Below are positions 15,299-30,108 of a stretch of 64,000 bases of DNA, one piece after another (the stretch's first letter is position 1; the number at the start of each line of letters is the position of its first letter). Source of the DNA: Dimorphilus gyrociliatus. Lineage: Eukaryota > Animalia > Annelida. Both the position numbers and the translations under genes were made by a program. The notes under the pieces were generated by a model. That model ran no database searches and was not told the DNA's origin. It saw only the letters and a program-made list of their open reading frames with translations. Where the stretch lies: NCBI GenBank assembly GCA_904063045.1, contig CAJFCJ010000006.1, forward strand, positions 1,651,601 through 1,715,600, given 5' to 3'.

Positions 15299-18290
15299 TT
15301 ACTTTTCCAGTTTATTTTCAGCTACCTGAGGCCTACTAATTCCTCTGCAAGCCTTCTCTAGTTTAATGAATGGTAATTCGATGAAAGTCGTTAAAACAAA
15401 GGCAACCATAAGTGAATAAATCAAAAAGGCAGGGTAGAGAATAACCTAACAATACATAATAGAAATTGCATAATTGAAAGTAAACAAACTCACATGCTCA
15501 CCCAGTAAATTTGATGAAAGAAAAGTGGCTTCGGAAATGATCGTAAGAATAATCTAAAAATTGTTAGGTGAACTAGATAGAGACTATAGGTAAGTCTGCT
15601 AATTGGTAGCCATATATTCAAACTCAAAATGCCATTAATTGCCCAACCATAACCATGCCAACATGCAAATATAGTCCATGCTATGCAACATGACCAGATT
15701 AGTCTATAGGTACTCTCGAAAAATATTTTTACACCCCTTGACCATTTATCTTGATGATATCTCACATAAAGAAGGGCGAGTGCCACTGAAATTGTGACTA
15801 TCCAAATGATGAGAGCAATAACCTTTATTTGGATAATAAAATATTACAAAATGACAACAACGTTGCAATGGATGTTCACCCGTGCCAAACATTTTCTTTT
15901 AAACGACGTTACTCCCCTCGTCTTACTTCCGAGAAATCCTATTAGAACTCCAATTGCATAAGCTCCAATCCTACACCATGGCTTTATATAAATCGACTGG
16001 AAAGTGCTAAATGGTTCTGTCCTGTTTTTGCTAATTAATGAAACACTTATACTTAATAGTAATAGGATATAATCTATTATTTATTCCTATCTCTTAAAAT
16101 GATCATTTATAAGGCTCATTTAGCATCTTTCAAAATGTTAACTGACTACTTTTAATATAAAAAATCTATAATTGACTTAAATGGATTGTTAAAGTTATAA
16201 AATCAACTGTAAAGGTTAATTATCTATAATACATACTCTGTCGCTTTATGCCATAAAACGATATTAGCCACAAGATTACCTATAATTAGACCTATTGTTA
16301 ATATTATTCCGAATATCTTGTTTCTGAAAGAGTTCAAAAATAAAAATATATTTTTGTTAATAAGGTCAACGAACTGTAAAAGACAAAGGCTAACCTTTTG
16401 TATGCAATGAGGAAAATAGGCAAGATGGCGAACATTTGAAAGTCGTTAGGTATATACCAAGAATGACTGAGACACTTCATTTGAAAGAGATGAAAATAAT
16501 AAAAGTAATGACGACACTTGTATATATTCAGGATTAGTTTAATTATTTCTTTACCTCTAGTACTTTTGCCGAGAAAAAATTATGAATAAAGAGTAAATGT
16601 TTCCACCATGAACTTTCGCAAGTTTTAACAAAATCATCTCGCTCAACACTATAAGGACCGTATGGTATGAATTTAACAAAGCATATCTCTATCATAAGAA
16701 CAATTGCAAAAACAGGTGTCAGCCGTATAACTCTATGAAGGTAGTAGAGTATAAATACTTTTGGTCTCAATTTCTGAATGTTGATTAAAAATAGAAGAGT
16801 TGTGAGGAATCCACTAAAGGAGAATAAAACGAAAAATTGCTTTTTACAGTAAAAAAAAGAGAAATGAGTTTGGTCCTTTTTATTCGTAAAAATTTTAAAT
16901 AATTAACAAAAATAGGTGAACTATTTTGTAGAGAAAGCTCACCTAAGTACAAAAAAAGTGTCGACGGATACTGTTGCAGCGCTGATAGCTTGAAATGCGA
17001 GATTATTAATTGTTGTCATTTTTTGAAGGATATTGGCTGCAAATTAGTATGGAAATATTATTATACATTAAGATGAAGTTGAGAAAAAAAACTTTACAAA
17101 TGTATCCAGGTGTATCCGAGTATGTATGGCCTAAGACAACCCACATAATTGTAATAGCCCTTATACCGTGTAAGCATTGTATTGAATTTTTAGAATGTTG
17201 AGTATTTAGGACATTATTAGCGTTGGTTTTAAATGAAAAGCATATAAAAAATTTTGCTGCAGTCTCCTCAGCACTGATATTGTGGTAAAATAAAGATATA
17301 TATATATATATTTTTTTTACTATATTTAAGCATATCTTACCCGATGAGGTCCAAGAATGTTCCAATTAGAACGAGGAGAAAAAAGATACACGAAACGACA
17401 CTAAGAAGAATATTATAGATAATTTTTTTAAAGAAATGATAATGTATAATAATTACAATGCTGCTATGGCGGCTTTGCTCTTCCAGAACGGTCTTTCGAA
17501 CTCGCATTCAATTTTGCTGGAAAAAATATCGGAGATATTATACGGTGTCCTTAATAATTCATTATTTTTAGGCGTAGTACAAGATGACGGTAGACAGAGT
17601 CCTAAACTCAAAAGAGCTGGATTGTTACCAAGTTGCTTTTGAGATAATTTAAATGTTGTTATAAACATTTAACATTTCTCTTCCATAAGTAAAGAACACA
17701 CATACCATTGAAAATCTACAAAATTTCGGTTCCAAATCTGTCTTGTTATTTACAATTTCCATTTTGACATCTTTACATTGGGCAAAATTTCCAAAATCTT
17801 TTTGCATTAAATAGTAACCGATCTCTCCATCTTTAAACCACGAATCGGTCACTAAAATAAGTATTTTAGTATAGTATATGCAATATAAAGTACAAATACA
17901 CATATATTAAAAATACAGTATAATTTAATCAATATAATTAGTTTTTTTCCATTCTAGTTTTGCAAGATTAATTATCTAATTAGATATTTTTCATTTAAAC
18001 AATGCTATGTAAAAATTCAAAGAATTTAAAATGATAGGAATGCAAAACTTCTTACTTTTATATGCCCAATCGACACCAACTGCCGACAATGCATATATAG
18101 CTTGAACATCTTCTACACAGCTGGTTAAAGTTTTACTTGAATTAATATTGCTGTTGGCCAAGGTATTTAGTAGGCTCCTAACTTTTTCTCTTTTAATATA
18201 TTTATTAAGGATTTTCTTGTTATTAGCATTAATATCATATTGAATAGTGATTCCAATTATCGCTATTAAAAATAGCAGTACTACTTTCAT
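15299..18290 (-). CDS. Nose resistant to fluoxetine 6 / O-acyltransferase-like (NRF domain plus acyltransferase-3), about 10 exons
   Basis: Signal peptide MKVVLLFLIAIIG, NRF-domain DFGNFAQC, CLHGIRAITIMWVVLGHTY, YLHRVIRLTP, WLPISRLTYSLYLVH and FIELPFIKLEK. Confidence 0.88.
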
Positions 18291-18630
18291 CCTTGTTTAA
18301 TTTTGAATAAGTCACAATAAGAGAATGGACAAGTTTTTATAAATATTGCATGATTCATATAACTTGAAGTTTAATCTGTGCTTATCTGGTAGTTAGTGTT
18401 AATAAAGCGATCTTAATCTATGAGTAAATCTATTTTAGTTGAAGGCATCTAAAAGACTTTTAAAAAATCTATTTTGAATGAATAATATATCAAGAAGCAT
18501 AAAATCAAACGATTCACAAATACTATCACAAAGATAATGAAGATAATAGGTAGTGACTAGTAATATTATTAGATAATATTTCCAAATAATGTAAGAAAAC
18601 ATCGTTTAAAGTCTTATTCAAAGTAAACCG

Positions 18631-19399
18631 AAATAACCAATTAAAACGATGCACTACTATTTAATTAATATGTAAATGAGTGTGAATTTAAAACCATAAC
18701 AGGTTTTAAATAACTTTTAGCCTTGCATTCCACCATTCGATTTGATAGGATGAAAGCCGTTCAAAAAGTTTTCCCTCTTTACGGGGAAGAAGCGGAAAAT
18801 AAGTTCGTATTCTTGTCTTCTATTCTTTTCTTACAAATATATAAATATATTTTCGTAATTTGAAAATACAAATACTCTATGACTAATCTCTTTAGGCATT
18901 TCGTTTATGTATATCTAAAACAAGTGATTGTTTTACAATATTTACTAGTCTCAATCTATTAGTAAGTTTACTTTATTAATCTCTTTTGATTCAGTGGTTC
19001 ACCGTTAAAACTTTTAATATCTTGAGTGAGTCACATTTTGAATTTTATAGATTAAATCCAAAATCCAAAGGTATGTATACTGTATACATGTGTGTGTATG
19101 TATACTGTATACATGTGTGTGTATGTATACAATATATTAGGAAAACATTAAGAATAGCATATATTGGCAAATATGTCGGAAAAAATCTCTTCTAAAGCCT
19201 TATTCGACATGAACTTAAATAACCAATTAAAACAATGCACTGCCGTTTAATTAATATGTAAATAAGCGTGAATTTAAAACCGTAACCGGTCTCAAATAAT
19301 TTTAGTTCTGTATTCCACCATTCGATTTGTTAGGATGAAAGCAGTGCAGAAAGTTATTCCTCTTTACGGGGAAGAAGCGGAAAACAAGTTCGTATTCTT
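18631..19399 (+). repeat. Tandem ~184-bp direct repeat (copy 1 18631-18814, copy 2 19217-19399), each containing a short intron-like segment and a coding first exon
   Basis: The copies align almost without gaps. Both contain gtaaat...ttttag followed by an ORF MKAVQKV(F/I)[10 protein letters not shown] ending at a phase-2 GTTCGT donor. Confidence 0.9.
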
Positions 19400-20945
19400 C
19401 CCTTCTTTTCTTTTCTTTGCTTTCTTTTGCTTTCTTGTTTTTTTTTTATGTTATTTTCTTCGGATCCTTCGTTGCGCTATAGTTAAAGATTTCAATTTTC
19501 AATATAGTTTGATTTTTAATAGATATAGAATTGAAAACAGGGGAGGAAAGTTTAAGAGTCAACTGCGTGAAATTTTTAATATGCACTGTAGTCTAATATA
19601 TATATTTGTATATTATATATATTACAATATACAATATATATATTAATATATATATATATAATTAAAAAATGCTGTATAGCAACCTTCTGAGTTGGTAAGA
19701 ATTGAAAAAGGTGTTTGAAATCAATATATTAGAAAGAGTAACACAACAATTGTTGAATTTTATTAAAAGTATGAACAATTTTTACAGCATTCGAATAGAA
19801 GAAACTGAAATTTCGAAAGAATTTCGAGATATAAAGTAAGAACTGAATAAGCTAATTATTCTCACCTACAACGCGTTAGATTGAGCTAATTTGTAGAAAT
19901 TCCTTTTAAAATATGTTTTTATTATATTATTTATTTAGTTTATATATAGTTGGCGTCGTTGCCGCAAAAATCTGTAGCGCCGCCATTTATCGACATGGAA
20001 CAGTCGACGACGCACGAATGTTCAGCGTTTCTTAATGGAACGCAACCAAATTTTAATGAAGATCAGGTCTACATTTCAAAGAAACGGTTAAATGTTTTTT
20101 ATTGAATTTTTTAAAATTAATCTATTAAGTATGGTTAATTAATTAGTATTTTCCAAGTTTGTTCTATAGAAAATGTTCTTTTTCTTTTTTTGTTTGTTCT
20201 ACCATGAACTAGTCAAATATTATAAAAAATATCAAAAATTACATAAGTAATTAATAAAAAAGAAAATTTTATACGTTTTCTTATTCTTTCTTTCTTTTCC
20301 CGTTTATGCTCAACAGAACGGATCGTAAGAAGAGTAAATTTTGGTGGTTTAGAAGAACTTTTTTGGAGCGTTCTCTTATTCTGATTGTTCTATTCTTCCT
20401 TCTCGCTCTTATTGTTACGGTAATAGTCGCTGCTAGAAGATCATCAGGTAAACAAATTTTATATATACATATATATGTTTATATATAGATATGTATATAT
20501 TTAATAAAAATCAATAATAAATATATTTAAATGTATATTTTAGGGATAAATTATATATAGATGTATATTGTATTTAATTGCAGTATATATATTTAAATCC
20601 TTTTAGACATATATTGTACATATAAACTATATCTATACGGCATACAAATTTACATAAATTATGACATATTAGTATTTGTAAGTAAAATTATTATCACAGT
20701 ACCCTGGATACGATGAGGTGCTGTATAAAAACAGTAGAAATATCAATAGGCCTAACTGTTGATATATATGAAAGATATAATTTTTTTTGCAATTATTCAA
20801 AGATTATTACGTACATTACTTAAGATTTTTACAAAATAGTAAAAAGTTTACCGCCCAAACTAATTCTTGACTGGTTTTACGTTATATAACAAGAATCGTT
20901 CTACTTTTTTCTATAATCTCTCTTTTTCGCTTAGTCACTTTCCCT

Positions 20946-20981
<36 letters not shown>

Positions 20982-23900
20982 TCTCTGTCTGTTTGTCTAT
21001 TTATCTCTTTCTCTAGTATTTCCCTAAATTTTCATTTTTTATGTCATTTATCGGACCCAAAACATATTTTTTCATAAAGAGATAACTCATAAAAATGATT
21101 CGCAAAAATTTCTGTTTCAGATATAAATTACAGTAGGTGTGGCCTATTTTTCGTTCTTTATGAGATACAGTACAATATATACTAAATAATACTTTAGCAG
21201 TCAGAGTGTATAATTTACGTTGGTAAATGTATTTAGTAACAAAAAGGTACATTTCCATAACTTACATTGTTCAGTTTAGCACATACAGGAAATATATTGA
21301 TATTAGTAACTTGAGCTTTGTTTATTAGCATAATCTAGGAAAAGTTAAATGTCTTTTATTTTTTTTTGACATTTAATTTATCCTGTTTTTTCGTCATAGA
21401 AAAGAAAACAATGTATAGAGCATTGTAGTAATATTTATTCTCATACAGTTTTATACGTTAAACTATATAATTTTAACTTGTATCTGCTTTATTTTCTCTC
21501 TTTATAAACTGCATTAAGAAAGTAATCTTAGTTAGTATTTATTATTTATCTTTCTTTTCTGGAGTGAGTGATGCTAGAGTGTCATTTTTTATTAAAATAT
21601 ATATATATATATATATAACAAATATAAAAAGTGTATGAGGGATGTCTTTATCTTGAGTACTCGTTTTTATTATAGTCATGAATTTAGGCTGCCTTATTAT
21701 TAGACTATAGAAATATAAAGAATAAATTTGTTATACTAATTAATAGTCTAATCCCTATTAATTTACACATTTTCAAGGTAAAGTAAGAACATTGTATGTA
21801 TCTGTATTATATGTTTATGTACAGTATTATGTATGTATGATTACACTACATCGCTAGGTCTGTGTATATATATATATATTTATTTATAAAATATTATTAT
21901 AATTAAATATGCACACGAGTATACAATAAACCGTAAGCAATATACACTGGTAAGGTTATGAGTTCGTATACCTTACATAAAGGTGTAAGTCTTACTCTCT
22001 TCAAAAACACATGTTATATACGACATATTCTGTATGCATTTACTTCTTTCGTTACGCGATTGTTTGCCGCCTCTTTGTAGTTTTCTACCTATACGGATTA
22101 AAGCGTGCATTTGCTTTTTCCCATCCTTTTTTTTACCAATTCCTTAATTAGTCAATTTTCACAGGCTCAGATTACTTCGACCCAAGTGGAACTTGCTTAA
22201 AAGAAGAGTGTGTCAGCGCGGGTAATGTATCGTCTTAATTATTTTTTCTGTTCTTTCTCCACCTTCTCCCCCCTTCCTCTAACCCTTTTCTATTTTAGCA
22301 CGAATTAGTTGACCTTATTTTTTTTAACATAGCGGCGAGAATAATTGAAGCCAGAGATTTGACTGTCAATCCCTGCGACGACTTTTACGAATATGCTTGC
22401 GGTAATTGGAGGAAAAGGAATGTCGTACCGGAAGACCAGTCCAGTTATACGATGTTTACGGCGTTGAATGAACGCCTTGATAGGCTTTTGAAAGGCAAGT
22501 CAATTTCCTGTATCCTTTTTTTCCAGTTTACAATTCCGCATTGGTAGGTTGGCGTTGGCGTTTGAATGTCATAGAAAACTTTTAGTAAATAGTAAACCGC
22601 CTACGAACTTTTTCTAATGGTCCGAAATAGTTTTTTTTATATTTTTTTAACGGATTTTTTATGATAATTGCATACGAACTACTTGTAACCATGACCATCT
22701 TTTTGACAGAACTGATAGAAAACAACGAATATTTAAACACGCTAGCACCTATCCAAAAAGTACGAACACTGTATAATTCGTGTTTAAACACGACGAGAAT
22801 AGAAGATCGGGGTCTTCAACCTTTGACCGATCTCCTATCAGATCTCGGCGAATGGCCTGTGCTGAACCCTCACTGGACATCACAAGGGAAAAATTGGATT
22901 GATACTTTGGTTAAACTTCGTCTGTTTAATAACCAACCTCTATTCAAAACCTGGGTTCATGCCGACGAAAGAGAGCCGCTTAAGAACATTCTTCAGATTG
23001 ATCAAGCTGAGCTGGGTTTACCAACTAAAAACTTTTTCAAACAAAAATCGAAAACGGACGCCTATTTGAAATTTATGAAGGATGTTGCAAATCTGCTTCA
23101 AGCTTCGCGAGAGAGAGCGGACGAGCATCTCGGCGAAGTTCTTCGATTTGAAAAACGACTTTCGGGATTCTTGGCAGAGGAAGCATCGAGGCGTGACCTT
23201 AAAAAGATGTATAAGAAGATGACTTTGAAGGAATTGTCAAGAAATACGACGGTAAGCAATTTGTTAGGCTCTTTAGGCTTATTTTTAGCAGAGATCTACA
23301 TAGAAATTAATTATAGAATTATATGTTAATTATTTCCGCGAAATAAGCTAACTTTATATATTATTATTTCCCGTTGTAAGACTGTCTAATACGAGATTAT
23401 TATTATTATCCAAGTTTGCAAGGTATTCCCTTTGACAATACGTTTAATAAACGTCTTATAGGTAAGTATTATTATAAATGCTGCTCTATTCTTTTCAAGT
23501 TTCTTTAAAAGTAAGATGTATAATGGGAATCTAATTTTTTCTATTTCCATTACAGAACATAGACTGGATGAGATTCTTTACAAAAGTTTTTCAAAGTGTT
23601 AATATCAACATAACACAAGAGACCGAAGTTGTTGTATATAACTTAAAGTATCTAATCGATTTGGATTCTCTTATTGCGGAAGAAAAGGCCAAGTAAGTTA
23701 AAAGACGATTCAAAGAAAAATCCTTTTTTCCTCTTTTTTCTCTTTCTTTGCTTACTTTATTTAAAGAGATAAATAGATTTATATTTCTGGCAACGCCATC
23801 TGATGATTCTTACTGTTTAAGGAACTTTTGTAATTTATCATTAAAATGATTACACCATCAGAGGGCGCTTTAACTCAATCTATTTTATTCGATAAGCTCG

Positions 23901-26900
23901 TATACAGTTCCAATCGTATCATATTCGACTATTTGATATGGATAACGCTAACGAAGATTTATCCGACTCTACCTCAAAAATTCTTCGAAATCCGAAAACC
24001 TTATACGCAGGTAATTTCTTGACTGGAAAATATTAAAAGTTCTTTCCACTTCCCGTACAGTACCGATGCCGAACCATTATTTGAGACCACCATTCAAAAT
24101 TACGTAGTATGGTTAATGGTTAAGAATCGTTTAAAAAATATGGGTAAAAAATATTCCTCAGCCAGACTACCATTTCGCGAGGTATTCAGTAGGCCTATAA
24201 AATCAAATTAATGGGAGCTATATTTGATTCAGACGATTCAATTGATTATTCTTCATAATTTTTTAATTTACTCAGTAGTACCACTAATTTCACTAATTCA
24301 GGTATTAGATTGTAACCATGGGCCATACAAAATTTCACGCATGCCAAACATACTGTTTCGTTTTGTTTTTTTTTGCATATTTATCGAATATCGAACTTTT
24401 TCTTTCTCAGGTTATGTTTGGAACGACCCAAGAACAGGCTAGGTGGCGAGATTGCGTAACCGTAACAAACAACTTTTTGGGTTTCGCAACAAGTCGCCTA
24501 TTTGTTGATAGATATTTTGATGAATCGTCTAAAAAAGTTGCCCTGGAGATGATTGGAAAAGTTCGCGACTCTTTTAATGAGATCCTGAAAGAACTTGACT
24601 GGATGGACGATGAGGCCCGTAAAACTGCAAAAGAAAAAGCTGATGCTATTAGGGATAGTATCGGGTATCCGGAGTTTATTCAAAATAATACGGCTTTGAA
24701 TAATTATTATAAAAGTGTAAGCGTAAACCTCACAAATTGAGTTTATTTAATTAGAAAAAACCCATTCCAATAACATTATAGAGATAGGAGAGGAAATATC
24801 ACACTTATGATGTTTATTTACTTTATAGGTAACCGTCAATGAATCTAATTACTTTGAAAATTATCTGGAATTCCTAAAATTTACAACAAGAAGAGATCTA
24901 AGTAGATTAGATAAACCAGTTGATAAAACAATGTAAAACATCTTTTACTATATTTCAAATTTCTCTAATGATATTGTTTCCCTTCCCGTCATACAGCTGG
25001 CACACACCACCGACCACTGTAAACGCCTTCTATAATCCTATGTTTAATATGATAAGTTAGTTTCTTTTAAGAAAAAAATATTAAAATATCAAAGAGAAAC
25101 GGAAAAAAATTAACTTATGATGTCTTTTATACCTTTTCAATTTTCAGCTTTTCCTGCTGCCATACTGCAACCGCCTTTTTATAATGAAAACTTCCCAAAG
25201 TAAGTGAATTTAATTCTATAAATATTGGAAAAATGAAAATTCATCTTCTTATTTCCTTTTTATAATGCTTCTAACGCTTTTAATTAGCCTAACCGAGACG
25301 TTTCTGGCTTTTAGCACCGCAAATTATGAACAAAATATGCACTTCCTCTGTTTTTCCTACAAATATATATACACATATTCTATAGACTCTCTACTCAAAT
25401 TACAAATCAAATTATTTTCCTTTTACAACAAAAGAGTGAGAAAGAGATACTAAAAACATATTATATATACAGTATATATACATATATATATAAACATTAA
25501 TTGATTAATTAATTTTAAAAACAAAAACATACACAAAAAAGGTATTTAAATTACGGTGGAATCGGTTACGTAATCGGTCACGAAATATCTCACGGATTCG
25601 ACGATGTTGGTGAGTAGTAATTAGGTGTATATAAATTCTTGTACGGAAAATAACAAACAAAGGAAGGAACGCCCCTAAAAGGGCGTATCTTTTGCGATGC
25701 TTTGAAAAGCGAGATACGCCTCGAAGGTATAACAAGTTTGGAATAAAATTCGCGCTTCAGGTATATTAACTATGGAGGCATAGCAACCGTCATCGGTCAT
25801 GAAATCACTCATGGTTTCGACGATCGAGGTAAAAAGTTACAAGAGCATGAAGGGTTGATTTTAGTTTGATGCCCTGTAAACATGTCTGTAAACTACAAAT
25901 GTCAAGTACGAACTTTTACGTCTGTTTGTTTTTCAGTTAAGACGTCGACGTCACTAGTGTAGAATGTTGATCCCTAGACAACGCCATCTGACGATTACTT
26001 TAATTTTTTTGTTTTAGTTTGTTAAATCCCTGATTAGACCCCTGAATTTTGTATAATTAATAGACTGTAAAGTCGAACAGTTAGTTAAATCGTATCAGAG
26101 AAATAGAACATTAGTTAATATTCGTTTGTAATCCTCCTATGAAGGTTATTAAGGAGACTAATTAACTTGTGTACAAATTAAGGTCGGTTATTTGATAAGG
26201 ATGGAAAAATGAGAACATGGTGGTCTGACGAAGTTGTAAAAAAGTTCGAAAAAAGGGCTAGCTGCATAATAAACCAATACGGAAATTATCTGGTCGAAGA
26301 AGTCAATAAAACGGTAAATTTCTTCTAACCTTATCTAAGAAACCCAATTATTCTTGATTTAATGCTACAATTGAAAACTATTCCTAGAGAGAATCAAAGG
26401 AATAATTCAAATAAATATTCTTTTTCCAACAGATTAATGGAGTACAGACTCAAGGGGAAAACATTGCTGATAACGGCGGTTTAAAGCAGGCTTTTCGAGT
26501 AAAATTCACTATTAAAATAATTAATCCTCTTTTAGCTAAATTATGCACGAATAAATTAATCTAAATTTAATAGGCCTACAAGAAGCTTGTGAGGGAGGGT
26601 TTAAGAGAGCAAGTTCTACCAGGTATTGATTTGAACCCTGATCAATTATTCTTTTTAAATTTTGCTCAGGTAATTATAATTAAATGAGTGAGTGAAATAT
26701 CCCAAAAGAATTTTATCATTGATAAATATCTTCACAACAGGTCTGGTGTGGTTCTGAACGAAAAGAGTATTCTATGCAGACACTAACCAACGGAAAACAC
26801 AGTCCTGGAAGATTTAGGTTTGTATATGCGTATATTTTACTTTGTAATCATACTATATTTCATTATAGGGTTATTGGAACTCTACAAAACTCTGGAGACT

Positions 26901-26968
26901 TTGCGAAAGCATTTAAATGCGCCAACGGAAGTCCAATGAATCCTGAAAATAAATGTTCTTTATGGTGA
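18750..26968 (+). CDS. M13 neprilysin/endothelin-converting-enzyme-like type II membrane metallopeptidase with alternative first exons (18750-18802, 19335-19387, 19995-20086) and two mutually exclusive exon pairs (23908-24010 / 24061-24181 and 25542-25609 / 25761-25828)
   Basis: Transmembrane anchor (20317-20448), [40 protein letters not shown](S/T)[32 protein letters not shown] and C-terminal CSLW. Splice junctions were checked by hand and are phase-consistent. Confidence 0.95.
19071..19130. repeat. 25-bp minisatellite, 2.4 copies (gtatgtatactgtatacatgtgtgt)
   Basis: Direct read; it lies between the two duplicated first-exon modules. Confidence 0.9.
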
Positions 26969-28674
26969 CTGCGCTCGACTTGAATGGTCCCTTACAGCTT
27001 GCTTTTTCCTCCCTCAACCAAATCTACTTCTGCTCCTCCTGTTTCTCCATCATGGTTTTCTCCCTTCTTCTCTATTGCTCTTCAGATATATTAAAAATAT
27101 AGTTCAACCTTAAGAAATCGTCGCTACGTCACCGAAGAAAAAATTTCTGCTGTTTTACTAAAAAGAGAATTAAAAAAAAAACATAAAAAGAAACAAAAAA
27201 ATCATTAATTTTTTCAATAAGTTTCCAAATATTTTTTAGTTGAGAAATTTGAAAGTTTGCTTGAATTTCGTTTATTTTCTCTCCTCCTTTCTCTCCTTTT
27301 CCATTGCTATCTTGTATAAAAACAGATTTAAAAAAAACAGAAAAACAGAAAAAAAAAATCCAAAGAGACTAATTCTTTTGGTATTAATGTTTAAAAAAAT
27401 ACTATATACTAATGAACTAAGTGTAATGATATAAATAATATATATTGTATATATATAGTGTTTTTTAAACAAAGATATTTCATTGTCTCTAAACTTTGTA
27501 AATATAAAAAAGGCTACATTGTAATTTGTGTGATTTAATTAACTAATTAATAATTTCATAAAAATTCTTTTTTCATATATTCTATAAAAATTTAGTTAGT
27601 TAATTCCATGTTTTATTGCGTGTTAAATAGAATTCTTTATAATAAAAAAAACTACTAATTTTTTAGAGAGAGAGAGACTGATATAATGTAAAAGTTAATT
27701 CTTTATATGCTCTATTTTGTCCCTTTAACTTCCGTATTAATATTTTTCATGATTGTGAACAAAAATTTTAATACAACTTTAAAATAGATTGTAAATGATT
27801 TATTCAAATTTTATATAGTATAAACTATGAAAGAGGATTTTTGGAGAAGAGGAAAGGAATAGATAGAATATAATATTTACACAAAGAGGCTAATAGTAAG
27901 AAAGGAAAATGGAATAGCAGGAAATAGATAAAAGAAAAAAAACACCGCTCCATATTTATTGAATCAATGACATTTATTTATTAAATATTTTCTATGCTTG
28001 TTTATTCAAGATTTTTACAAACTAAAACTTTCTTTGAAAGGTAAAACTACATCAAAAAAAAAAAAAGAAGCAACAAAACAAACCTTACAATCTCTACTTT
28101 CATCTGAAAATTATCCTTCTTCCTTTAGTTCCGTCTACTATATAGTTTATAAATGATAACTATTGTGGATAAAAATCACGTTACGTTAGTCTCATAGAGT
28201 TATATACACGTATGATAATACTAGATTTTTCTAAATACTCCTTCCTTACTATATATCCTAAAAAAGAGAGAGAGAATTGAAAAACTCCAAACAATATTAG
28301 TATTATTATTAAAATTTATAATAATAAAAAAAAATAAAACGTGACAAGCATAAAATCAAAGAAAATATAATAAAATAAAATAAAAAACAAGCAGATCTTT
28401 GAATATATAAATAGTTAAAAAGTATATAAAAAAAAACTTATTAGGTTGAAGGTGTAAAGATTGTTAATAAAAAATGTTTATTATATAGATAATATCTTCT
28501 AAATTCGATGATATTTGTTTATTCTTGTCTCCCATTAACCGAGTAAATAGTTATAGAGTGTTGTTCGTTTTTTTTTTTTGTTTTGTTTTTTCAATTTTTG
28601 TTTACTAATCTAAGAAAGATTTGAGTAGTTTTCCCTCTTTTTGCCTGTCTGCCTGTCCCTCTGAGCAGATGACT

Positions 28675-29543
28675 TTAAAATCCTTTTCGGGATCTTGCTC
28701 GGCTGGAATATTGAGAATAATCGGCGAAATGGTCATCGGAAGCCGTGGCTATTCTTGGTTGAATAAGAACTGAGGGTTTACCGATCGATTCGGCGTAGTC
28801 GGCTGTTTTATTTACAAAGGGATAAAATTGTTTTCTTCTATTAATAGATATTTATAACTAAACTTACATTTTGCAACGACAGGTATAGTCTCATTTTTAA
28901 GTAAAACTCTAGATCGCCTCGGAACTTGTCTAGAACCTAGTACAATTGCCAAGAGAGCTAAAACGATTCCGTCGAATATAGCTATGACGGCTAATATCAA
29001 AGCCCAACGAATTTCACAATCTGCCCTATCAAACTTATCCGAATCTTTACCACAAACTCTTCTGACGTCTTTGTCATCCCACCCATTAGGATAAACTAAA
29101 CAACCGATTGCCAGAAAGATAGCAGCTAGTATCAAAAGCATAGCTATACTGTAGTATACTCGCTTAGGTGATACGAAGAAAAAGAGGAGGAGAGAGATTA
29201 CACAGAAGAAGATAATTAGCACAGAGATTCCAACAAGAACAGTAGCAGCTTTAAAGTTCCCATTGAGTATTGATGAAAAATTATCCAATCCACCAAAACA
29301 CTTTAATTCACCAGATGTATCCTCAAGGAGAATGCAATATTTAAATAGACCAAAATATCCAGTTCCTGGTGAACTTTTAGAGTCACCCAGCCATTGTGGC
29401 TGAGCGAAAACGACTACTTCGATAATAGCCAAACAGATAACGAATAGAGCCCAAATAACGCCGACAACTCGGGCGTTTCTTACGTATTTATAATAATATA
29501 TTTTTGTCGCCTCCGCGGCACTTTGATAAGACGAACGATCCAT
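28675..29543 (-). CDS. LHFPL: LHFPL tetraspan / TMHS family (LHFPL3/4/5-like); exons 29543-28868, 28802-28675
   Basis: AAEATKIYYYKYVRNARVVGVIWALF, QPQWLGD, GYFGLFKYC, YPNGWD and CEIRWALILA, with four transmembrane segments. Confidence 0.92.
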
Positions 29544-30108
29544 ACTGAAATAAGAATTTTCACTTTTAAAATACCTGTTTAAATAATCAACTTTTCAAGA
29601 CACTGCAAATAGTAAATATATGTGGAATTTTTCACATAGTAGCGGTATCCTACGTACCTATATTTAATCATATGAAACAGGTTTAGACAGTACAATAAGG
29701 CTATTATTCATACAGCTTGAACGATTAAACTTAAGGAATTTTGTGTTGCTTTGACGCACTAATCGACCATATTAATTGCATTTCTTATAGGAAAGTATAT
29801 GTAAAAGTTACTCACACTGATTAATAATGTTCAACAATTTGTATAAAATGAAAAAATTGAAGATTATAATTACATTATTGACTCGCTTTCGAGCGTTCAA
29901 TATATAGTGTGGTTCGTGCTTTGTTCTCGTTTAAAATAAATAATTTTATTCATTATTTTTACATCGATATAAATGTTTAGATATTTACAATTTTCTGTGA
30001 GGTAATAAATAGAAACACAGTTTTGTTTTTCTTTTAACAGGTAAATGCAAGGGAACCATACTTTTCAGGTGGTTTCCGGTCAGGTAAGACAAATACAAAT
30101 CGGAAAAG

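What the first reader, a model, noticed from the sequence alone, without database searches (positions are those of the whole stretch)
18631..26968. Synthesis: a compact combinatorial peptidase locus (3 x 2 x 2 = up to 12 isoforms)
The three switches act on separate functional layers: location (cytoplasmic tail), substrate gating (helical lobe) and catalytic specificity (HExxH exon). In a genome with minimal intergenic space, this could substitute for the neprilysin gene-family expansions seen in other invertebrates, acting like a small Dscam-style cassette system for neuropeptide inactivation. The exons are read from sequence, but the functional logic is inference.
Basis: inference. Interest (0 to 1): 0.85.

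Follow-up and report, generated by a model that had tools for sequence, protein, structure and literature searches.

The report
Peptidase gene with swappable exon pairs
One neprilysin-type peptidase gene of a small marine worm carries two pairs of either-or exons, one of which rebuilds the zinc catalytic helix, plus several alternative first exons; it could therefore make several enzyme versions, but only two were seen in the one RNA data set available.

Summary
The locus is a single 21-exon M13 (neprilysin/ECE-like) type II membrane peptidase gene. It lies on the + strand and its stop codon is at 26966-26968.

**Exon pairs.** Both tandem exon pairs exist.
- Helical-lobe pair: hA 23908-24010 and hB 24061-24181.
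- HExxH pair: zA 25542-25609 and zB 25761-25828.
- Including both or neither exon of a pair shifts the frame.

**RNA evidence.** Spliced contigs of one public run show hA and hB both in use, at depths of about 127 and 76.

**Conservation.** A related species' 10-kb contig (about 76% DNA identity) keeps all four alternative exons with intact splice sites.
- zA differs at 5 bases, all third-position and synonymous.
- The zA-zB intron is 95% identical, against 41-78% for ordinary introns.
- That intron can pair (-36.5 kcal/mol) with an invariant block upstream of zA, which would loop zA out.

**Function.** zA and zB differ at the residue matching human neprilysin Met579, which lines the S1' pocket.

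**Verdict.** The architecture is real. zA is selected but was not seen spliced. The "3" is really four candidate first exons, two of them nearly identical. The figure of 12 combinations is untested. This scan has noted many exon pairs in this same genome, including one in ACE.

The parts
18576..18832 (+). N1a module: about 174 nt of upstream sequence plus candidate first coding exon N1a (ATG 18750 to donor at 18802, 53 nt, phase 2)
   Evidence: Tandem copy of the N1b module, 84% identical over 257 nt. The ORF joins the TM exon in frame. No RNA evidence.
19161..19417 (+). N1b module: duplicate of N1a; exon N1b 19335-19387
   Evidence: N1a vs N1b coding: 6 nt differences, 5 at third positions, pS 0.49, pN 0.02, one F/I change. 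No RNA evidence.
19771..19835 (+). N1c: the 5' coding exon seen in RNA (22-residue tail); it could also act as a 66-nt in-frame cassette starting at 19770
   Evidence: The loose end at 20317 ends with the 30 bases of 19806-19835. Contig record 1 runs unbranched from 255 nt upstream through the TM exon to e5. Frames checked.
19995..20086 (+).
   Evidence: Frame-compatible with the TM exon. No RNA evidence.
20317..20447 (+). Common exon with basic juxtamembrane stretch and type II signal anchor
   Evidence: Translation. Covered by RNA contig record 1.
22165..23692 (+). Constitutive exons e3 22165-22221, e4 22333-22494 (GC-AG intron follows), e5 22710-23251, e6 23556-23692
   Evidence: Joints. 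Pfam Peptidase_M13_N on e5, E 2.8e-38. Conserved in L002.
23792..23868 (+). Conserved intronic hairpin upstream of hA: 17-mer arm 23792-23808 pairs with 23855-23868 (-18.6 kcal/mol)
   Evidence: Both arms are identical in L002 while the loop between them varies.
23908..24010 (+). hA, helical-lobe alternative exon (103 nt)
   Evidence: Joints 23692->23908 (depth 127) and 24007->24408 (depth 100). Conserved in L002, pN/pS 0.28.
24061..24181 (+). hB, helical-lobe alternative exon (121 nt, 6 extra residues); separated from hA by a 50-nt intron
   Evidence: Joints 23692->24061 (depth 76) and 24179->24409 (depth 73). Conserved in L002, pN/pS 0.29. The intron is also exactly 50 nt in L002.
24411..25199 (+). 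Constitutive exons e8 24411-24716, e9 24829-24932, e10 24997-25055 (NAFY motif), e11 25148-25199
   Evidence: A single contig (record 4, depth 217) spans them and runs into zB. Pfam hit on e8.
25233..25323 (+). Intronic block 100% identical in the related species; 25286-25323 is the 5' arm of the predicted long-range duplex; contains TATAAT at 25261-25266
25542..25609 (+). zA, alternative HExxH exon (HEISH; Tyr at the NEP Met579 position); weak A-rich acceptor, GTGAGT donor
   Evidence: Intact in the window and in L002, with 5 differences, all synonymous third positions. zA vs zB: pS 0.86, pN 0.15. No splice joint seen.
25610..25760 (+). zA-zB intron, 95% identical between species; 25690-25729 is the 3' arm of the long-range duplex; local hairpins at 25664-25690 and 25678-25724 compete with it
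25761..25828 (+). zB, HExxH exon used in the RNA sample (HEITH; Thr at the NEP Met579 position)
   Evidence: Joints 25199->25761 (depth 217) and 25826->26181 (depth 147). Two synonymous differences in L002.
25829..25997 (+). Conserved intronic stretch downstream of zB, containing the second copy of the 17-mer (25980-25996)
26183..26968 (+). Constitutive exons e13 26183-26313, e14 26433-26498 (ENIADNGG, third zinc ligand), e15 26574-26669, e16 26741-26817, e17 26869-26968 (ends CSLW, then stop)
   Evidence: Pfam Peptidase_M13 hits. Conserved in L002.

Best explanation
This is one neprilysin/ECE-type (M13) type II membrane zinc peptidase gene that diversifies its product by alternative splicing at three places.

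1. Helical-lobe pair (shown). Two old tandem exons, hA and hB, are used one at a time, at roughly 60:40 in the sampled RNA. They replace the domain-2 segment that leads into the interdomain contact equivalent to human NEP Gly399.

2. HExxH pair (zB use is shown; regulated use of zA is inferred). Two 68-nt exons, zA and zB, each encode the HExxH zinc helix. They differ at five positions, including the equivalent of S1' residue Met579 (Tyr in zA, Thr in zB). zB is the default. zA is a regulated minor or cell-specific choice.

3. Default mechanism (predicted). An invariant block upstream of zA (25286-25323) pairs with the invariant zA-zB intron (25690-25729). This loops zA out and brings the e11 donor next to the zB acceptor. 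Local hairpins or a bound protein would free zA.

4. Enforcement of exclusivity (sequence shown; decay of the shifted transcripts inferred). Including both or neither exon of a pair shifts the frame and creates an early stop.

5. N-terminus (N1c shown; the rest inferred). Several alternative 5' coding exons supply different cytoplasmic tails. N1c is dominant in the sample. N1a, N1b and N1d are candidates.

How many of the possible combinations are made, and whether the choices are independent, is unknown.
For: Gene model and family:
- All combinations give 748-758 aa ORFs; including both or neither exon of a pair gives a premature stop.
- Pfam Peptidase_M13_N and Peptidase_M13 hits.
- 41-44% full-length identity to mollusc and nemertean neprilysin-like proteins.

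RNA contigs:
- Both hA and hB joints are present.
- Only zB joints are present.
- N1c is joined to the TM exon in an unbranched 1148-nt contig.

Related-species contig L002:
- All exons and splice sites are kept.
- zA has 5 of 5 changes at third positions and synonymous, which has a chance of about 0.004 if there were no coding constraint.
- zB has 2 of 2 synonymous changes.

Other evidence:
- zA vs zB: pS 0.86, pN 0.15, so this is an old duplication with both copies under purifying selection.
- The zA-zB intron is 144/152 identical, against 41-78% for the other introns.
- The duplex 25286-25323 x 25690-25729 is -36.5 kcal/mol, the best of 4254 windows across the 64 kb. It is -38.2 kcal/mol in L002. 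One U-A pair changed to U-G is tolerated.
- Residue mapping to human NEP. The Met579-equivalent is the most variable position of this motif among 66 homologues.
- Met579 lines the S1' pocket (PMC11997989). G399V changes selectivity and moves the helix preceding it (PMC4121237).
Against: - No contig shows zA spliced to e11 or e13. zA lies in a contig that runs unspliced into zB.
- Only one RNA run, kept as contigs, was available. It gives no strand, no ends, no rare variants, no tissue or stage information.
- zA sits in an ultra-conserved stretch, so part of its conservation could serve RNA structure or a promoter rather than protein.
- The duplex arms do not vary between the two species, so there is no covariation test.
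- The zA-zB intron alone folds no better than shuffles (z -1.19), and whole-block duplex scores were not significant.
- N1a, N1b and N1d have no RNA support, and they could not be examined in the relative because the contig starts downstream.
Confidence: 0.65

Rival explanations
1. zA is a retired exon. It is no longer spliced in and is kept only because it lies inside a conserved regulatory RNA or DNA element. On this reading the gene makes just two proteins (hA or hB, each with zB), apart from any tail variants.
For: No zA joints in the RNA contigs. The acceptor is weak and A-rich. zA sits in an unspliced contig of depth 55. The flanking intron is as conserved as the exon.
Against: All 5 interspecies changes in zA are synonymous third positions, while the flanking intron changes show no such pattern. 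Both splice sites, the exon length and the HExxH motif are intact in two species. pS of 0.86 against pN of 0.15 relative to zB shows long purifying selection. Contigs drop rare variants.
Confidence: 0.2
2. The conserved block upstream of zA is an internal promoter, or the end of an antisense RNA, rather than a splicing docking element. An RNA starting near 25288 runs unspliced through zA and zB, and the complementarity to the zA-zB intron is incidental.
For: Contig record 5 starts at 25288, 27 nt after a conserved TATAAT. Depth is zero at 25200-25287, and the e8-to-zB contig does not branch at the e11 donor. The unspliced depths of 55 and 74 are far above the 8-16 seen in other introns.
Against: The tool warns that holes in contig cover prove nothing. 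Contigs are unstranded. The duplex is the strongest partner of the arm in 64 kb and is kept in the relative. The two ideas are not mutually exclusive.
Confidence: 0.25
3. The choices are coupled, so only a few isoforms exist rather than 12. A shared regulator acting on the 17-mer present in both clusters, or promoter-dependent splicing, would link the tail, helical and catalytic choices.
For: The exact 17-mer AACGCCATCTGAYGATT occurs upstream of hA and downstream of zB and nowhere else in the 64 kb (0.36 matches at up to 3 mismatches expected by chance). Both copies are conserved in L002. Only one tail and one z exon were seen alongside two h exons.
Against: No data link the exons along single molecules. 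In the h cluster the 17-mer forms a local hairpin, so it need not be a protein-binding site.
Confidence: 0.4

Closest known systems
Endothelin-converting enzyme-1 isoforms a-d (human M13 peptidase)
   Same: One gene. The isoforms differ only in the N-terminal cytoplasmic tail, through alternative promoters and first exons joined to a common exon. In ECE-1 the tail sets subcellular location (PMC2567069). Oyster and clam homologues also have annotated isoforms that differ only at the N-terminus.
   Different: ECE-1 has no alternative catalytic or lobe exons. Here only one tail exon has RNA support, and two of the four candidates encode nearly the same peptide.
Mutually exclusive exon clusters controlled by competing RNA pairings (insect Dscam1, 14-3-3 zeta, human ATE1; named from general knowledge)
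   Same: Tandem homologous exons, conserved intronic elements and a long-range pairing that loops out one alternative. Frame incompatibility acts as a backstop.
   Different: Each cluster has only two alternatives. One duplex plus local hairpins is predicted, not a docking site with several selectors. There is no covariation or experimental support yet.
Human neprilysin structure-function data (Met579 in the S1' pocket; G399V engineered variant)
   Same: The zA/zB swap changes the Met579-equivalent. The hA/hB swap replaces the helix that ends just before the Gly399-equivalent, where a single mutation reshapes substrate selectivity (PMC11997989, PMC4121237).
   Different: In human NEP these are fixed residues or laboratory mutations. 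Here the variation would be produced naturally by splicing. No enzyme data exist for this protein.
ACE active-site exon pair in the same genome
   Same: Another zinc peptidase gene of this genome is said to carry two either-or copies of its active-site exon.
   Different: It is a different family (M2) and a single cluster. I did not test that note.
Closest homologous genes in Patella, Lineus, Mytilus and Haliotis
   Same: 41-44% identical full-length neprilysin-like proteins. The HExxH segment is encoded by a small exon that starts and ends at the same residues in the translated DNA.
   Different: Each has a single HExxH exon and a single helical exon. The duplications were therefore not found outside the lineage of this worm and its relative.

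Membership tests
Peptidase family M13 (neprilysin/ECE) | Peptidase_M13_N and Peptidase_M13 domains | tested here: met
   Pfam PF05649 on e5 (E 2.8e-38) and e8 (E 2.6e-30). PF01431 on e13 and e17 above the cut-off; e14 and e15 score below it only because they are short.
Peptidase family M13 (neprilysin/ECE) | HExxH zinc motif, downstream ExxxD third ligand (ENIADNGG), NAFY substrate-binding Asn, C-terminal CxxW | tested here: met
   All are present in the translated model. HExxH is present in both zA (HEISH) and zB (HEITH).
Peptidase family M13 (neprilysin/ECE) | Type II topology: short cytoplasmic tail, single signal-anchor helix, large ectodomain | tested here: met
   The TM exon encodes a basic stretch followed by about 22 hydrophobic residues after an 18-31 residue tail. 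This was read from the translation; no topology predictor was run.
Mutually exclusive exon pair | Adjacent homologous exons with the same phases; including both or neither breaks the frame | tested here: met
   hA is 103 nt and hB 121 nt (both 1 mod 3). zA and zB are each 68 nt (2 mod 3). Premature stops result in all four wrong combinations. Both members of each pair align to the same family columns.
Mutually exclusive exon pair | Transcripts contain exactly one member of the pair, and each member is used | tested here: inconclusive
   Met for hA/hB: four joints, and no both-in or both-out joint. For zA/zB only zB joints were seen. Contigs cannot exclude rare zA use.
Mutually exclusive exon pair | Both members kept under coding selection in a related species | tested here: met
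   L002: zA 0 non-synonymous and 4-5 synonymous changes; zB 0 and 2; hA pN/pS 0.28; hB 0.29. Splice sites are intact.
RNA-pairing (docking/selector-type) control of exon choice | Conserved intronic elements that are complementary and bracket an alternative exon | tested here: met
   25286-25323 x 25690-25729, -36.5 kcal/mol, top of 4254 windows. Both arms are invariant in L002.
RNA-pairing (docking/selector-type) control of exon choice | Compensatory changes, or mutational proof that the pairing sets the choice | not testable with these tools
   The arms are identical in the only relative found, apart from one U-A to U-G change. A minigene experiment is needed.
ECE-1-like alternative cytoplasmic tails | Several first coding exons, each with its own ATG, spliced in the same phase to the common TM exon | tested here: inconclusive
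   Four candidates are frame-compatible. Only N1c is seen in RNA. N1a and N1b show a third-position substitution bias.
ECE-1-like alternative cytoplasmic tails | Tails direct the enzyme to different compartments | not testable with these tools
   No recognised sorting motif was established. Tagged expression is needed.

The most novel reading that the evidence does not exclude
In this gene-poor, compact annelid genome, a single M13 peptidase gene would stand in for a family of paralogues. It would combine alternative tails, a swappable interdomain helix and a swappable catalytic HExxH exon that resizes the S1' pocket. The catalytic choice would be set by a conserved long-range RNA duplex, and the two clusters would be co-regulated through a shared 17-mer. 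Together with the ACE, GH27 and p38 exon pairs noted elsewhere in this genome, this would point to either-or exons at active sites as a general way of keeping enzyme diversity after gene loss.
Probability: 0.2. Interest if true: 0.8.

Novelty: new variant of a known kind. Interest (0 to 1): 0.6.

Why it matters
Mutually exclusive exons and alternative M13 tails are both known. I found no report of an M13 peptidase that swaps the exon carrying its HExxH zinc site, or that stacks two either-or clusters with alternative tails (searches found nothing relevant).

If zA is used, one gene would make peptidases with different S1' pockets. That can be tested directly with four recombinant ectodomains.

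The invariant intron and its predicted duplex give a compact natural model for RNA-structure control of exon choice outside insects and vertebrates.

The case also bears on how a miniaturised animal with a reduced gene set (PMC7854359) keeps functional diversity.

Tried and rejected
- **N-terminal exons in the related species.** Searches with the TM-exon ORF and with the upstream neighbour's first exon found nothing. The relative's contigs all start downstream of the TM exon. N1a-N1d conservation is therefore untested.
- **Known RNA families.** An Rfam scan of 23600-26300 gave only a sub-threshold SAM-III hit, E 0.57, which I treat as noise. The conserved intron blocks are not known RNA families.
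- **Whole-block duplex and fold scores.** Duplex z-scores between the three conserved z-cluster blocks were not significant (z -1.6, +1.2, -0.9). The zA-zB intron alone folds no better than shuffles. Only the specific arm-to-arm duplex stands out.
- **Partners for other elements.** No outstanding partner was found for the z-cluster 17-mer or for the hA-hB intron.
- **Steric block in the 50-nt hA-hB intron.** I considered this but did not adopt it as established, because a constitutive 51-nt intron exists in the same gene (26818-26868).
- **Trans-splicing at AG sites just upstream of the N1 ATGs.** Rejected. The RNA contig extends 255 nt upstream of the TM exon, and the genome paper reports no spliced leaders (PMC7854359).
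- **Further hidden exon copies.** None were found in the gene, and there is no second M13 gene in the window.


Full report
**What is there**

Stop-to-stop translation of 18000-27300 shows, on the + strand, the pieces of a neprilysin-like protein. I fixed the exon borders by hand and checked them by assembling the coding sequence. The gene has:
- a 5' coding exon;
- a common exon with the signal anchor (20317-20447);
- e3 to e6;
- one of hA or hB;
- e8 to e11;
- one of zA or zB;
- e13 to e17, ending with CSLW and a stop at 26966-26968.

All tested combinations give open reading frames of 748-758 residues. Pfam places the pieces in Peptidase_M13_N and Peptidase_M13. The full model is 41-44% identical to neprilysin-like proteins of mussels, limpets, abalone and a nemertean. 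HExx[13 protein letters not shown] and the C-terminal CxxW are all present. There is no second M13 gene in the window and no further hidden exon copy in the gene.

Earlier notes of this scan name the genome as Dimorphilus gyrociliatus. I did not verify this. The low G+C content, the 50-120 nt introns and the lophotrochozoan best hits fit the published description (PMC7854359).

**The two exon pairs**

- hA (23908-24010, 103 nt) and hB (24061-24181, 121 nt) share phases and are separated by a 50-nt intron.
- zA (25542-25609) and zB (25761-25828) are both 68 nt.
- Including both or neither member of a pair shifts the frame and gives an early stop.
- Both members of each pair align to the same columns of a 66-homologue alignment.

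**RNA evidence**

Only one public run holds this locus. It is kept as contigs, and its GT..AG joints show that it is RNA.

Helical pair:
- There are joints from e6 to hA (depth 127) and from e6 to hB (depth 76).
- There are joints from hA (depth 100) and from hB (depth 73) to e8.
- No hA-hB joint and no skipping joint was found.
- The two depths add up to roughly the depth of the flanking constitutive contig.
- The helical pair is therefore a working either-or pair, used at about 60:40 in that sample.

Catalytic pair:
- Only zB is joined: e11 to zB at depth 217 and zB to e13 at depth 147.
- zA lies inside a 503-nt contig (25288-25790, depth 55) that runs unspliced into zB, with no branch at the zA borders.
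- The apparent cut of that contig at 25542 is a masking artefact. The bin depths match contiguous cover from 25288.

5' end:
- One 1148-nt contig (depth 139) runs unbranched from 255 nt upstream of the TM exon through e5.
- Its last 30 upstream letters are 19806-19835.

Contigs can lose minor variants, so the absence of zA, N1a, N1b and N1d joints is weak evidence against their use.

**Comparison with a related species**

A search with the e8 exon found one 97%-identical ORF in Logan assemblies. Its 10-kb genomic contig, L002, is collinear with 20.8-30.1 kb of the window at about 76% identity, and the downstream neighbour is the same.
- Every exon from e3 to e17, including hA, hB, zA and zB, is present without gaps and with intact splice sites. 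Both isoforms read through to the stop.
- zA differs at 5 bases, all at third positions and synonymous. The chance of this is about (1/3)^5 = 0.004 without coding constraint.
- zB differs at 2 bases, both synonymous.
- hA and hB have pN/pS values of 0.28 and 0.29.
- Within the window, zA against zB has pS 0.86 and pN 0.15. This is an old duplication with both copies held by protein-level selection.
- The closest homologous genes of Patella, Lineus, Mytilus and Haliotis have single copies of both exons.

**Conserved introns and a predicted mechanism**

- Ordinary introns of this gene are 41-78% identical between the two species. The zA-zB intron is 144/152 identical.
- A block upstream of zA (25233-25323) is 100% identical, and 25829-25997 downstream of zB is also conserved.
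- RNAalifold pairs 25286-25323 with 25690-25729. This duplex is -36.5 kcal/mol, and -38.2 kcal/mol in L002.
- It is the best partner of the arm among 4254 windows across the 64 kb, where the mean is -11.8 and the SD 4.4.
- The duplex would loop out zA and bring the e11 donor close to the zB acceptor. That fits zB being the default.
- Two local hairpins in the same intron (-11.7 and -17.7 kcal/mol) use part of the 3' arm and could compete with the duplex.
- There is no covariation, because the arms do not vary. Coarser tests were not significant. This step is therefore a prediction.

In the h cluster, a 17-mer (23792-23808) forms a conserved -18.6 kcal/mol hairpin with 23855-23868, 40 nt before hA. 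The same 17-mer recurs at 25980-25996 downstream of zB.

**What the swaps would change**

- Aligned to human neprilysin, zA and zB differ at positions 572, 578, 579, 586 and 592.
- Met579 lines the hydrophobic S1' pocket (PMC11997989). Its equivalent is Tyr in zA and Thr in zB, and it is the most variable position of the motif among homologues.
- hA/hB correspond to about residues 356-395 of neprilysin, in domain 2. They end 4 residues before the Gly399 equivalent.
- In human neprilysin, G399V at the domain interface changes substrate selectivity up to 250-fold and moves the helix preceding it (PMC4121237).
No enzyme data exist for this protein.

**The N-terminus**

- N1a and N1b sit in a 257-nt tandem duplication that is 84% identical and includes about 174 nt upstream of each ATG.
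- Their 18-residue peptides differ by one residue. Five of the 6 coding differences are at third positions. They look like real coding exons, but they would add regulatory choice rather than protein diversity.
- N1d (19995-20086) is frame-compatible with the TM exon.
- N1c is the exon seen in RNA. It could also serve as a 66-nt in-frame cassette after N1a or N1b. Which of these holds could not be settled.
- Alternative tails are the known pattern in ECE-1 (PMC2567069) and in annotated oyster and clam isoforms.

**Verdict**

The architecture is real, and one switch is proven. The catalytic switch is strongly supported by evolution but was not seen in RNA. The tail switch is miscounted and mostly unsupported by RNA. 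The figure of 12 freely combined isoforms is untested, as are the roles in neuropeptide inactivation and in replacing a gene family.

Literature searches found no report of an M13 gene with either-or HExxH exons.

This scan has noted many either-or exon pairs in this same genome, including an ACE active-site pair. It has not noted this one on other DNA.

Noticed in passing
window 25200-26210: RNA cover seems to begin at about 25288, inside the e11-zB intron. This is 27 nt after a TATAAT (25261-25266) that lies in a block invariant between species. From there it runs unspliced through zA, zB and the next intron at depths 55-74, against 8-16 for other retained introns. The e8-to-zB contig does not branch at the e11 donor. 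Possible readings are an internal promoter, the end of an antisense RNA, or an assembly hole.
   Followed up: partly
window 23792-23808 and 25980-25996: The exact 17-mer AACGCCATCTGAYGATT occurs upstream of hA and downstream of zB and nowhere else in the 64 kb. Both copies are conserved in the related species. The first copy is the 5' arm of a conserved hairpin. No convincing partner was found for the second copy.
   Followed up: partly
window 22495-22709: GC-AG intron (donor AAG|GCAAGT) after e4. It is used in the RNA contig and conserved in the related species.
   Followed up: yes
window 25542-25828, 23908-24010, 26433-26498: Synonymous divergence from the relative is much lower in zA, zB, hA and e14 (pS 0.07-0.29) than in most constitutive exons (0.4-0.8). 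This suggests extra RNA-level constraint on these exons.
   Followed up: partly
window 17337-18290, minus strand: The upstream neighbour, transcribed divergently, starts with a signal peptide. It has Cys-rich ORFs that resemble the N-terminal domain of nose-resistant-to-fluoxetine-type acyltransferases; that resemblance is from memory and was not tested. Only about 460 nt separate its start from the N1a ATG.
   Followed up: no
L002 8780-9556 (window about 28674-29915), minus strand: The downstream neighbour carries a Pfam L_HMGIC_fpl domain and is syntenic in the related species.
   Followed up: no
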